Below are positions 44,771 through 48,102 of a stretch of DNA of 64,000 bases, one piece after another. The stretch is taken from IMG/VR virus record IMGVR_UViG_3300032116_000001, positions 62,001 through 126,000 of that record; one strand, given 5' to 3'. Every line of letters begins with the position of its first letter. Positions within the stretch are counted from its first letter, which is position 1. Below the pieces are notes generated by a model, which searched no databases, was not told the DNA's origin, and saw only the letters and a list, made by a program, of their open reading frames with translations. Position numbers and translations under genes: made by a program.

Positions 44771-45511
44771 ATGTATAAACTTATGTCAAATTCAGCATAT
44801 ACTCAGTCAATAACAGAGCTTTTTGCAAAATTATACAAACCAAGATCGGAAGTTGTTCCTTTTAACAGGAGTGACTTGGAGACGATATGCCAAAAATATA
44901 ATGTTAAAAACATAGGAGATGTTTTGTATAGTTTTCGCAGCCGTCAGCAATTACCAAGTAGCATTAGAAGAACTGCAAAAAGAGGATTTCACTGGGTTAT
45001 TGAATTTAAGGGCAAGGGGAAATACCAATTTTCTCAATGGCCTGTTGCTTATATTAAGCCACAAATACTTGAGCCAACACTAATAAAAGATTGCACGCCC
45101 AAAATGATTAGCCAGTGTCTTGCGGATGATGAACAAGGCATGCTAACAAGAATGCGACACAATAATATACTGAGAAATTTTCTTGATCTTGATATTTATC
45201 ATCTTCAAAGCCATCTTAGAACATTTGTTCCTGGCGTTGGGCAAGTTGAAATTGATGATGTTTATGTTGGTGTTGATCAGCAAAGTAAACAATTTATCAT
45301 TCCTATTCAGGCCAAGTCATCTCATGATTTAATATCTGCGACACAATGTTCACAAGATATATTGTATTGCGAGTATTTTCATCCAAATTACAAATGTCGC
45401 TCGGTTGCAATAAAATCTATAGGAAATGAAACCTTGGCAGTTTTTGAATTAAAAGCAAAAGCCCCTGGCCATATTTGCATTGTAAATGAGCGTCATTTTC
45501 AATTTATTTAA
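44771..45511 (+). CDS. Type II restriction-endonuclease-like protein (PD-(D/E)XK), no adjacent methyltransferase
   Basis: KNIGDVLYSFR, DEQ, LQSHLRT.VPGVGQVEIDDVYVG...PIQAK. Confidence 0.6.
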   Translation: MYKLMSNSAYTQSITELFAKLYKPRSEVVPFNRSDLETICQKYNVKNIGDVLYSFRSRQQLPSSIRRTAKRGFHWVIEFKGKGKYQFSQWPVAYIKPQILEPTLIKDCTPKMISQCLADDEQGMLTRMRHNNILRNFLDLDIYHLQSHLRTFVPGVGQVEIDDVYVGVDQQSKQFIIPIQAKSSHDLISATQCSQDILYCEYFHPNYKCRSVAIKSIGNETLAVFELKAKAPGHICIVNERHFQFI

Positions 45512-45577
45512 AACTTTTTTATTAAACAAAACGTATAAATAAATACGTTGTCTTTAATAAGGCAAGGAAGGAACGAA

Positions 45578-46123
45578 ATAAACAACAACAATAATAATCG
45601 CAAATCGCGGCGAGAGCCGCCTCCGAACATTAATGAGCGTCTTCTCCGATTTGGAGAAATCAGAGTCATTAATGCAGATGGTGATCAAATAGGTATAATG
45701 ACGTCAAGAAAGGCGCTAGACTTGGCCTTGGAAGATGGCCTTGACTTGATTTTAATTGCTGAGTCTGCAAAGCCTCCTGTATGCAAAATTGCCGATTATG
45801 GTAAGCATAAATACATTGAGGCGAAGCGCAAGAAAACAAGCAACAGTAAAAAACCTCAAGAAACCAAGAGTCTTAAAATTAGCCCGAGAATTTCTGATCA
45901 CGATTTAGGTATTACGGCTAAAAAAGCCTCTAACTTTTTGGAGCATGGAGATAAAGTTAGACTAATGTGTTTATTCAAGGCCCGTGAGCTTTCGCACCCA
46001 GCGCTTGGAAAAGAAAGACTGGCAAAGCTTATTGATTGTCTTTCCAGCTCTGCAATACCCGAGGGTGAGCCTTTGTTGGAAGGCAAAGTAATGGCCGTGG
46101 TTTTGCGGCCCAAAGATAATTAA
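45578..46123 (+). CDS. infC: Translation initiation factor IF-3
   Basis: INER...IRVI..DG.QIGIM...LDL..IA..AKPPVCKIADYGKHKY...GDKVR. Probable ATA start at 45578 behind AAGGAAGG; alternative TTG at 45548. Confidence 0.92.
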   Translation: MNNNNNNRKSRREPPPNINERLLRFGEIRVINADGDQIGIMTSRKALDLALEDGLDLILIAESAKPPVCKIADYGKHKYIEAKRKKTSNSKKPQETKSLKISPRISDHDLGITAKKASNFLEHGDKVRLMCLFKARELSHPALGKERLAKLIDCLSSSAIPEGEPLLEGKVMAVVLRPKDN

Positions 46124-46138
46124 CGCACTCCAAAGCAC

Positions 46139-46180
46139 ACACAAAAAACATCATCTGTAAAAAGATGATGTTTTTTGTGT
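46139..46180 (+). terminator. Terminator after infC
   Basis: ACACAAAAAACATCATCT / AGATGATGTTTTTTGTGT. Confidence 0.7.
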
Positions 46181-47409: not shown

Positions 47410-48102
47410 TTGGGACAAGACCTATATATATTACAACTAGTTAGAAGGGCCAAAACTGGAGATGAGCGAGCTTTTTCTAGGCTCCTGGATGAAATAGAGC
47501 CAGACCTTAAAAAGGTCGCTCATCAATATTTTATTCAAGGACAAGACAAAGAAGATGTTCTTCAAGAACTAAGAATTGCAGTCTATAAGGCCGTGGGTTC
47601 CTATGATGAATCCCAAAACACTACGTTTAAAAGCTTTTGCATCAATCTTGTGTGTAAAAGGCATATATCCACGGCAATACATTCTGCACTAAGACACAAA
47701 AACAAAACTCTCAACAATGCAGTATCTCTTGATGCTCCAGTGATAATGGGTGATGATGGAAATATGCAATCTCTATCCGAGTTCATTCCTGACAGAGACA
47801 ATCCTTTGGAAGAAGACCTTGGTGATCGAAATATATTAGACGATTTGATATCCAGAGAGGAGCTTGAGGACAACCGCAAGCTTCTTGCGCCAAGGCTTAC
47901 ATCATTAGAGGGCAGGATTTTTGAGCAATATGGCCACAGCTCTTCGTATAAGGATATTGCAGAGGCATTGGGAATAGAACCCAAATGTGTTGACAATGCT
48001 CTTATGAGGATACGCAAAAAAGCCAGTGAAGTTTTTGACCAAACAGACCCAGGCAGCAATGTCAAAGATAGCGGCCCCAAAAAAAGAAGAAAACGAATTT
48101 AA
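47410..48102 (+). CDS. sigH: RNA polymerase sigma factor, SigH (Spo0H)-like
   Basis: YFIQGQDKEDVLQE...FKSF...KR.I.TAI..A.R.K.K.LN..VSLD...SYKDIAE...KCVDNALMRIRKK; TTG start with SD GAGGAG. Confidence 0.85.
   Translation: MGQDLYILQLVRRAKTGDERAFSRLLDEIEPDLKKVAHQYFIQGQDKEDVLQELRIAVYKAVGSYDESQNTTFKSFCINLVCKRHISTAIHSALRHKNKTLNNAVSLDAPVIMGDDGNMQSLSEFIPDRDNPLEEDLGDRNILDDLISREELEDNRKLLAPRLTSLEGRIFEQYGHSSSYKDIAEALGIEPKCVDNALMRIRKKASEVFDQTDPGSNVKDSGPKKRRKRI

What the first reader, a model, noticed from the sequence alone, without database searches (positions are those of the whole stretch)
45548..46123. Phage-encoded IF-3 that appears to keep a non-canonical AUA start codon
Seen: there is no in-frame ATG before the conserved N-domain. 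An SD-like AAGGAAGG (45564-45571) lies 6 nt before an in-frame ATA (45578). The track's TTG at 45548 has no SD. Known: bacterial infC autoregulates through a non-canonical start (AUU in E. coli) that IF-3 discriminates against, and IF-3 level affects leaderless translation. Inference: the phage copy acts as a sensor, made only when cellular IF-3 activity falls, and tunes initiation selectivity.
Basis: partly seen in the sequence, partly recalled or inferred. Interest (0 to 1): 0.6.

Follow-up and report, generated by a model that had tools for sequence, protein, structure and literature searches.

The report
Phage IF-3 gene starting at AUA
A 379-kb freshwater phage carries a full copy of bacterial translation initiation factor IF-3, and its close relatives all keep the rare AUA/AUU start codon that bacteria use to make IF-3 limit its own synthesis, so this phage probably doses the factor rather than flooding the cell with it.

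Summary
The window lies in a 378,848-bp virus record that CheckV rates complete. ORF 45548..46123 is a two-domain IF-3 that passes Pfam and the NCBIfam infC equivalog.

The annotated TTG (45548) has no Shine-Dalgarno. It lies inside a conserved hairpin and is absent from every relative.

ATA 45578 sits 6 nt after AAGGAAGG, one of the strongest SDs in the genome. It gives a 181-aa product, against 180 aa for E. coli IF-3.

Eight related phage loci (56-69% identity, mostly syntenic) all have SD + 6-7 nt + ATA, or ATT in one. None has ATG/GTG/TTG between the upstream in-frame stop and the conserved domain.

About 85% of 78 bacterial infC loci show the same SD+ATH layout, with ATA the commonest. 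Eleven other phage IF-3 genes of separate lineages start at ATG or GTG.

So this is an ordinary infC-type start kept under selection in one phage clade. IF-3-dependent feedback is inferred, not shown.

Also found: an ECF-type promoter, a covarying 5' hairpin and a strong terminator.

The parts
45510..45535 (+). ECF-type promoter-like motif: -35 AAAAC (45510-45514), T-tract (45515-45520), 17-nt spacer in all, -10 CGTA (45532-45535). The -35 overlaps the stop codon of the upstream gene.
   Evidence: ACGTA.AA is invariant in six relatives. The two-block motif [GA][CA]AAC-N16-18-CGTA[TGA][AT] has 27 genome hits, 14 of them in the 7.8% that is intergenic; permuted controls give 0-3. It matches the B. 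subtilis ECF consensus tGAAACnTTTt...CGTA (PMC5758882). Function is inferred.
45548..45565 (+). 5' stem-loop directly before the SD: stem 45548-45554 pairs with 45559-45565, loop 45555-45558. It contains the annotated TTG (45548-45550).
   Evidence: MFE folds. RNAalifold consensus of 7 pairs, 5 with compensatory changes in relatives. The stem is present in all members at 61% identity or more and absent in L101.
45548..45550 (+). TTG used by gene callers as the start (191-aa product). Rejected as the start.
   Evidence: No SD (+0.6 kcal/mol). Not present in any of eight relatives. Lies in the hairpin stem. A genuine TTG start in this phage, the sigma gene at 47410, has GAGGAG 5 nt upstream.
45564..45571 (+). 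Shine-Dalgarno AAGGAAGG
   Evidence: -7.6 kcal/mol against the anti-SD, top 7% of this genome's ORF starts. Conserved as GGAAGG, GGAGGG or AAGGAG in relatives, -7.3 to -9.8 kcal/mol.
45578..45580 (+). AUA start codon, presumably read as fMet
   Evidence: Invariant ATA in seven distinct relatives and ATT in L101. The tail from the start to the conserved N-I-N motif is a constant 16 codons (15 in L101). No ATG/GTG/TTG lies between the in-frame stop and the domain in any relative. Only 4 of 33 third-codon positions nearby are invariant.
45578..46123 (+). infC coding sequence, 181 codons plus TAA. IF3_N is about 45644-45838, the Lys-rich linker follows, and IF3_C is about 45860-46114.
   Evidence: Pfam, NCBIfam TIGR00168, PHROG 9787. 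PDB IF-3 of G. stearothermophilus, E = 7e-36, and of E. coli, E = 4e-30, with N-tails of matching length.
46139..46180 (+). 18-bp hairpin flanked by an A-run and a T-run: intrinsic terminator-like, possibly bidirectional
   Evidence: MFE -26.6 kcal/mol, z = -5.7, 0 of 200 shuffles fold as well.

Best explanation
This is a functional phage copy of bacterial infC. Translation starts at AUA 45578, 6 nt after a strong SD, and not at the annotated TTG. The product is 181 aa, the size of E. coli IF-3. The gene entered an ancestor of this freshwater huge-phage clade from a bacterium together with the usual infC start architecture (SD + AUH). The nearest cellular relative found is an Armatimonadota IF-3. 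The clade has kept AUH although a single base change would give AUG. The most likely reason is the one established for bacterial infC. IF-3 destabilises initiation complexes on AUH codons, so synthesis of phage IF-3 falls as total IF-3 activity (host plus phage) rises. The phage thus tops up or takes over the IF-3 pool at a bounded level instead of over-producing a factor that is harmful in excess. The gene looks like its own transcription unit: ECF-type promoter, a short 5' leader beginning with a stem-loop, SD, AUA, ORF, terminator. Shown here: gene identity, phage origin, the start-site architecture and its conservation. Inferred: use of AUA in vivo, IF-3 feedback, and promoter and hairpin function.
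For: Identity and phage context. SD strength and lack of SD at the TTG. Conservation: eight related loci (56-69% aa identity, shared neighbours metallopeptidase, unknown gene, clamp loader, sigma) all have SD + 6-7 nt + ATA or ATT. In-frame stops lie 6-23 codons upstream, and no canonical start occurs before the N-I-N motif. Synonymous sites are near saturation (4 of 33 invariant), yet the start codon's third base never becomes G. Gene callers truncated the relatives to 138-158 aa at internal ATG/GTG/TTG, removing part of IF3_N. Among 78 bacterial infC loci the best-SD start is ATH in 66 (ATA 29, ATT 21, ATC 16), and 25 have no canonical start at all. The nearest relative, L020, shows GAGGTGA + 6 nt + ATA. 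The clade groups together (SH-aLRT 90) next to that Fimbriimonadaceae sequence (86) in a quick tree. The N-tail length equals that of E. coli IF-3. R25 and Q33 are kept and R66 is K (PMC9723500). Literature: AUU/AUC autoregulation (PMC5499595), ATA-start infC in Deinococcus-Thermus (PMC2830850), IF-3 sensitivity of AUA reporters (PMC9723500).
Against: There is no direct mapping of the initiation site and no IF-3 titration. The window itself does offer a TTG 10 codons upstream. The host is unknown, so its IF-3 stringency towards AUA is unknown. Only about six independent sequence variants support the conservation argument. Eleven other phage IF-3 genes work with ATG or GTG, so feedback is not required of a phage IF-3. 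AUH could be retained for weak expression alone. RNA evidence is two 151-nt contigs inside the gene from metatranscriptome runs, which could be DNA carry-over. The tree is a quick search with moderate support.
Confidence: 0.65

Rival explanations
1. The AUA start is real but carries no feedback role in the phage. It is either a relic that came with the transferred gene, or simply a weak start that keeps expression low.
For: The same architecture is the norm in bacterial infC, so it arrives by default with the gene. Other phage IF-3 lineages use ATG or GTG without apparent harm. Only a handful of independent lineages are available.
Against: ATA to ATG is one transition. Synonymous sites nearby are almost saturated. 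The clade has diverged to 56% identity, yet 9 of 9 sequences keep ATH, with one ATA/ATT switch that preserves non-canonical status. A very strong SD paired with a poor codon is the infC signature, not that of a generally weak gene.
Confidence: 0.2
2. One reading: phage IF-3 is a sensor made only when host IF-3 activity drops, and its purpose is to retune start-codon and leaderless-mRNA selectivity.
For: IF-3 represses AUH starts (PMC5499595, PMC9723500). The phage protein differs from E. coli IF-3 at R66 (K) and has a clade-specific RREPPPNIN tail.
Against: AUU-started infC is well expressed at normal IF-3 levels in E. coli (PMC5499595). The strong SD and unstructured A-rich initiation region argue for substantial basal translation. 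Nothing in the sequence shows altered selectivity, and the IF-3 residues checked are conserved or conservatively replaced.
Confidence: 0.1
3. Translation starts at the annotated TTG 45548 (191 aa), or at another in-frame codon such as ATT 45629 or ATG 45698.
For: TTG is a canonical start, and it is what the gene callers chose.
Against: No SD. The TTG is paired in a conserved stem. It would lie about 2-6 nt from the predicted transcript 5' end (inferred from the CGTA position). It is absent from all relatives, two of which (L012, L014) have an in-frame stop only 6-7 codons before the ATA. ATG 45698 would delete the start of IF3_N. ATT 45629 has no SD.
Confidence: 0.05

Closest known systems
Bacterial infC with AUU/AUC/AUA start and IF-3 translational autoregulation (E. 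coli infC; ATA-start infC of Deinococcus-Thermus)
   Same: Two-domain IF-3 of about 180 aa. A strong SD is followed at 6 nt by an AUH codon, and no usable canonical start lies upstream of the domain. The architecture appears in 66 of 78 bacterial loci examined (PMC5499595, PMC2830850).
   Different: It is encoded by a 379-kb phage. It is not in the thrS-infC-rpmI-rplT operon; it stands alone between a phage gene of unknown function and a clamp-loader gene, behind an ECF-type promoter motif and a covarying 5' hairpin. Feedback would respond to host plus phage IF-3. Autoregulation was not tested.
IF-3 genes of other huge or jumbo phages (Agrobacterium phage Atu_ph07, Sinorhizobium phage Phosso, uncultured huge phages LR756501/04/11, IMG/VR loci L102-L107)
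   Same: Phage-encoded IF-3, already reported as a class (PMC7162821, PMC7824862, PMC11895373; PHROG 9787).
   Different: Those genes start at ATG or GTG, usually with an SD. They are only 33-40% identical to this protein and sit on long separate branches. The present clade is closer to bacterial IF-3 (51-54%) and keeps AUH.
Host infC inside 'phage' database records (e.g. Vibrio phage Va_90-11-286_p16)
   Same: IF-3 in a record labelled phage; the CDS call is truncated in the same way.
   Different: There the gene lies in an intact thrS-infC-rpmI-rplT block next to an integrase, so it is host DNA at a prophage border. Here the gene is 107 kb inside a phage genome and syntenic in related phages.
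B. subtilis ECF sigma (sigmaW/sigmaV-type) promoters
   Same: -35 ..AAC followed by a T-tract, 16-18 nt spacing, -10 CGTA (PMC5758882).
   Different: Found in a phage genome, before infC, tmRNA, tRNA clusters and several ORFs. The sigma that reads it is unknown. The neighbouring phage sigma is SigH-like and passes only the ECF-superfamily model.

Membership tests
Translation initiation factor IF-3 (infC; TIGR00168, PF05198 + PF00707) | N-terminal IF3_N domain | tested here: met
   PF05198 86.6 bits against cut-off 26.9, profile positions 5-69 of 70
Translation initiation factor IF-3 (infC; TIGR00168, PF05198 + PF00707) | C-terminal IF3_C domain | tested here: met
   PF00707 76.9 bits against cut-off 34.8, profile positions 2-86 of 86
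Translation initiation factor IF-3 (infC; TIGR00168, PF05198 + PF00707) | Full-length equivalog score above the curated cut-off | tested here: met
   TIGR00168 144.3 bits against cut-off 60. PDB IF-3 chains at E = 7e-36 and 4e-30 over nearly the full length.
Translation initiation factor IF-3 (infC; TIGR00168, PF05198 + PF00707) | NTD residues that contact the initiator-tRNA elbow (E. coli R25, Q33, R66) | tested here: met
   R, Q and K at the aligned positions (alignment; residues defined in PMC9723500). R66 to K is conservative.
Translation initiation factor IF-3 (infC; TIGR00168, PF05198 + PF00707) | 30S binding, subunit anti-association and start-codon proofreading | not testable with these tools
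   Needs biochemistry or complementation.
infC-type autoregulated start (non-canonical AUH) | AUH codon at proper distance from an SD, and no usable canonical start upstream of the conserved domain | tested here: met
   ATA lies 6 nt after AAGGAAGG. 8 of 8 relatives have no ATG/GTG/TTG there. The window's single TTG lacks an SD.
infC-type autoregulated start (non-canonical AUH) | AUH conserved at the homologous position among diverged homologues | tested here: met
   ATA in the window and seven relatives, ATT in L101. The tail to the N-I-N motif is a constant 16 (15) codons.
infC-type autoregulated start (non-canonical AUH) | Expression repressed by IF-3, with repression lost when AUH is changed to AUG | not testable with these tools
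   Defining experiment of Butler et al. 1987, as cited in PMC5499595. Not done for this gene.
infC-type autoregulated start (non-canonical AUH) | Usual operon context thrS-infC-rpmI-rplT (typical, not strictly defining) | tested here: not met
   Neighbours are PhageMetallopep, an unknown 246-aa gene, a clamp loader and a sigma factor.
ECF-type promoter | -35 AAC, 16-18 nt spacer, -10 CGTA, T-tract after the -35 | tested here: met
   Window 45510-45535. The motif class is enriched in intergenic DNA of the genome. Consensus from PMC5758882.
ECF-type promoter | Transcription start a few nt downstream, dependent on an ECF sigma | not testable with these tools
   The only RNA data were contigs, which cannot show 5' ends.

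The most novel reading that the evidence does not exclude
This phage clade runs a homeostatic takeover of initiation. A dedicated ECF-type promoter class drives a phage translation set (infC, tmRNA, tRNA clusters). The IF-3-sensitive AUA start lets phage IF-3 replace decaying host IF-3 while total IF-3 per ribosome stays constant. Phage lineages whose IF-3 genes start at ATG or GTG would instead raise IF-3 above the host set-point. On this reading phage IF-3 genes fall into two regulatory strategies, recognisable from the start codon alone.
Probability: 0.2. Interest if true: 0.65.

Novelty: new member of a known kind. Interest (0 to 1): 0.4.

Why it matters
What phage-encoded IF-3 does is an open question. 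Papers that report these genes say the function cannot be stated (PMC11895373, PMC7162821). This clade keeps the one feature that makes bacterial IF-3 self-limiting, while other phage lineages have replaced it with ATG or GTG. That gives a concrete, cheap test: native leader against an ATG reporter, with IF-3 titrated. It also suggests that at least some phages need IF-3 at a controlled dose, not in excess.

There is a practical point too. Standard gene callers mis-annotate these genes. The window's copy is extended to an unsupported TTG. Relatives are cut by about 23-43 residues into the N-domain. Catalogues of phage translation genes therefore carry wrong N-termini.

Tried and rejected
- A single-protein scan of IMG/VR found no relatives. 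An alignment query was needed.
- Rfam found nothing meaningful in 45400-45750; the best hit scored 16.8 bits against a gathering score of 224.5. The element is therefore not an L20-leader-type element.
- The sigma-70 promoter scan found no site in front of infC, and its terminator scan missed the AT-rich hairpin after the gene. Folding shows that hairpin.
- The conserved ACGTA.AA was first counted as a plain 8-mer and was not enriched. It made sense only as the -10 half of a two-block motif.
- I considered that the proline codons (CCGCCTCC) pair with the SD to mask it. The MFE and centroid folds leave the SD and AUA unpaired.
- TAG or TGA recoding, suggested by two tRNA-CUA genes: code 11 already gives 92% stop-to-stop coverage, with dips only in tRNA-rich regions. 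Standard code kept.
- Ribosomal protein S21 and IF-1 were not found in the genome.
- Metatranscriptomes gave only one 151-nt contig in each of two runs, both inside infC. This shows no 5' end and does not prove transcription.
- The careful maximum-likelihood search did not finish in the time allowed, so only the quick tree is reported. L002 and L102 were dropped from it because of stops in the tblastn segment.
The gut-metagenome contigs returned are bacterial metagenome contigs and were not used further.

Full report
**1. What is in the sequence.**
ORF 45548..46123 (+) is open from an in-frame TAA at 45536-45538. The in-frame start candidates before the conserved domain are ATA 45539, TTG 45548, ATA 45557 and ATA 45578. 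The first in-frame ATG is at 45698, inside the domain. The product has IF3_N (86.6 bits) and IF3_C (76.9 bits). It passes the NCBIfam infC equivalog at 144.3 bits against a cut-off of 60. It matches solved IF-3 structures over nearly its whole length, at E = 7e-36 and 4e-30.

**2. It is a phage gene.**
The window is bases 62001-126000 of a 378,848-bp IMG/VR virus record that CheckV rates 100% complete. That record holds a single IF3_N match. The window also encodes a large terminase, a DNA polymerase, ribonucleotide reductase, a DnaB-like helicase and a RecJ-like nuclease. The same DNA is found in freshwater metagenomes from 13 studies.

**3. Which codon starts translation.**
I scored pairing between the 17 nt upstream of each candidate and the anti-SD.
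- ATA 45578 scores -7.6 kcal/mol. That is in the top 7% of 323 first-ATG ORF starts of this genome and the top 1.8% of random positions.
- TTG 45548, ATA 45539 and ATA 45557 score +0.6 to +1.2, meaning no SD.
- A genuine TTG start in this phage, the sigma gene at 47410, has GAGGAG 5 nt upstream.
- Starting at ATA gives 181 aa. Its N-terminal tail has the same length as that of E. coli IF-3 (180 aa), with E. coli residue 11 aligned to residue 14 here.

**4. Relatives decide the matter.**
A word search found proteins 61-67% identical, called at only 138-158 aa. Their contigs share the neighbourhood PhageMetallopep, unknown gene, IF-3, then (dCMP deaminase), clamp loader and sigma. Extending each frame upstream shows, in every case, GGAAGG or GGAGGG, 6-7 nt, then an in-frame ATA. 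Alignment-based scans added three loci: L100 (68% identity, ATA), L113 (69%, ATA) and L101, a 112-kb viral contig (56%). L101 has AAGGAG + 6 nt + ATT at the same position.

Across the eight relatives:
- SD energies are -7.3 to -9.8 kcal/mol.
- The distance from the start to the conserved N-I-N motif is 16 codons (15 in L101).
- The upstream in-frame stop lies 6-23 codons before the ATH.
- No ATG, GTG or TTG lies between that stop and the N-I-N motif.

Only the window has a TTG there, which is why its gene call looks complete. The callers cut the relatives back to internal ATG/GTG/TTG codons, removing part of IF3_N.

In the six-sequence alignment only 4 of 33 third-codon positions at the 5' end of the gene are invariant. 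Another conserved Ile codon alternates between ATT and ATC. The start codon stays ATA. One transition would turn ATA into ATG, and it has not happened in any of nine sequences.

**5. Comparison with bacteria.**
I analysed 80 bacterial infC loci from many phyla; 78 were usable. The candidate with the best SD is ATH in 66 of them: ATA 29, ATT 21 and ATC 16. Twenty-five have no canonical start upstream of the domain at all. The closest cellular sequence is from a Fimbriimonadaceae (Armatimonadota) MAG at 51% identity. It has GAGGTGA + 6 nt + ATA and a similar basic, proline-rich tail.

The literature states that infC uses AUU or AUC (PMC5499595) and, in some bacteria, ATA (PMC2830850). It states that this codon is the target of IF-3 autoregulation. 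It also shows that IF-3 mutants raise initiation at AUA in E. coli (PMC9723500). The phage gene therefore carries the standard infC architecture.

**6. Comparison with other phages.**
Phage IF-3 genes are already known (PMC7162821, PMC7824862, PMC11895373; PHROG 9787). I inspected eleven from other lineages.
- Phosso and Atu_ph07 start at GTG with AAGGAG upstream.
- LR756501, LR756504, LR756511 and L102-L107 start at ATG.
- They are 33-40% identical to this protein.

In a quick maximum-likelihood tree they sit on long, separate branches. The present clade groups together (SH-aLRT 90) beside the Fimbriimonadaceae sequence (86). Support is moderate and the careful search was not finished. One "phage" record with IF-3, Vibrio phage Va_90-11-286_p16, simply contains the host thrS-infC-rpmI-rplT operon beside an integrase. 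My literature searches found no paper that notes the start codon of phage IF-3 genes.

**7. The rest of the unit.**
*Hairpin.* A stem-loop lies directly 5' of the SD, with 45548-45554 pairing with 45559-45565. The stem sequence differs among relatives but the pairing is kept. RNAalifold finds 7 pairs, 5 of them with compensatory changes. The annotated TTG forms the first three pairs of the stem. The hairpin is absent in L101.

*Promoter.* About 45 nt upstream of the ATA, ACGTA.AA is invariant. It is the -10 half of a two-block motif, [GA][CA]AAC + T/A-tract + N16-18 + CGTA.
- The extended pattern has 27 hits in the genome, 14 of them in the 7.8% that is intergenic. Permuted controls give 0-3.
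- The plain AAC-N16-18-CGTA has more intergenic hits (22) than any of the other 23 permutations of the tetramer (2-12).
- Other copies lie 17 nt before the tmRNA gene, near tRNA clusters and before several ORFs.
- The motif matches B. subtilis ECF promoters, tGAAACnTTTt...CGTA (PMC5758882).
- A SigH-like sigma of the ECF superfamily is encoded two genes downstream.

If transcription starts a few nt after the CGTA, the mRNA begins at about 45542-45546. The hairpin would then be 5'-terminal and the TTG would have no room for an SD. That step is inference.

*Terminator.* After the stop codon an 18-bp hairpin (46139-46180), flanked by A and T runs, folds at -26.6 kcal/mol, z = -5.7.

*Initiation region.* The SD, the AUA and the A-rich codons that follow are unpaired in both the MFE and centroid folds.

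**8. How it most likely works.**
*Shown:* this is a full IF-3 gene in a phage, with an SD+AUH start that is conserved and the only available start in its relatives.

*Inferred from established infC biology:* IF-3 rejects initiation complexes on AUH. Translation of the phage mRNA should therefore fall as total IF-3 rises, giving a bounded supply. Host shut-off and loss of host infC mRNA would raise the phage's share.

AUU-started infC is well expressed at normal IF-3 levels (PMC5499595), and this leader has one of the strongest SDs in the genome. IF-3 discrimination is also weaker in the cold (PMC5499595), which may matter in lake water.

Whether the phage protein has altered selectivity is unknown. 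R25 and Q33 are kept, R66 is K, and the clade has its own RREPPPNIN tail.

**9. Verdict.**
This is a new member of a known kind: infC with its autoregulatory start, in a phage. Its main value is the contrast with phage IF-3 genes that start at ATG or GTG, and the simple experiment this suggests.

Noticed in passing
window 45510-45535; genome (G000:C1) 293182, 294024, 312527, 316436, 318994, 323914, 324622, 326754, 338800 (+), 370561 and 377156 (-): A promoter-like two-block motif resembling ECF sigma promoters ([GA][CA]AAC, T-tract, N16-18, CGTA). It is enriched in intergenic DNA and precedes infC, the tmRNA gene (17 nt away), tRNA clusters and several ORFs. This hints at a shared transcription class for phage translation genes.
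   Followed up: partly
window 45548-45565 and the homologous sites in L002, L010, L012, L013, L014, L100, L113: A stem-loop immediately 5' of the infC SD, with compensatory changes between relatives. Its function is unknown: 5'-end stabiliser, processing site or protein-binding site.
   Followed up: partly
window 45611-45637 (codons for RREPPPNIN): A triple-proline motif in the N-terminal tail is invariant in the subclade at 61% identity or more (PAP in L101) and absent from E. coli and G. stearothermophilus IF-3. PPP motifs usually need EF-P, so translation of this IF-3 may depend on host EF-P.
   Followed up: no
G000:C1 294691-294763 and 294784-294858: Two tRNA genes with anticodon CUA (amber suppressors) sit next to a tmRNA gene (294065-294422, tag AENNFAFAA). 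Coding coverage gives no sign of TAG recoding (92% under code 11).
   Followed up: partly
G000:C1 complement 372471-372545: A tRNA-CAT whose acceptor stem (GCGGGG/CCCCGC) recalls bacterial initiator tRNA, by comparison from memory. It has a U1-A72 pair and only two of the three G-C pairs in the anticodon stem that IF-3 inspects. This is a possible phage initiator-like tRNA in a genome that also encodes IF-3.
   Followed up: no
G000:C1, whole record: 33 tRNA genes in two clusters (18-45 kb and 295-335 kb) plus the tmRNA. No S21 and no IF-1 were found. SD use across the genome is only moderate (median -3.0 kcal/mol against -1.5 at random positions), so the infC SD stands out.
   Followed up: partly
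L002, L010-L015 (proteins P0002-P0005, P0009) and L188 (MK672802.1): Public gene calls for these IF-3 genes are truncated to internal ATG/GTG/TTG codons (138-158 aa; 129 aa in the Vibrio record) because the callers do not allow ATH starts. The window's own call is over-extended to an unsupported TTG.
   Followed up: yes
window 46139-46180: A very stable 18-bp A/T-flanked hairpin between infC and the clamp-loader gene, likely a bidirectional intrinsic terminator. The simple terminator scan missed it.
   Followed up: partly
window 45586-45736 and 45820-45970: Two freshwater metatranscriptome runs each hold one 151-nt contig identical to the inside of infC and nothing from the flanking 1.1 kb. 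This is weak evidence of in-situ expression.
   Followed up: partly
window 44771-45511: The 246-aa gene upstream of infC has no Pfam match but is conserved (59-60% identity) and syntenic in related phages. Its stop codon overlaps the -35 element of the infC promoter motif.
   Followed up: no
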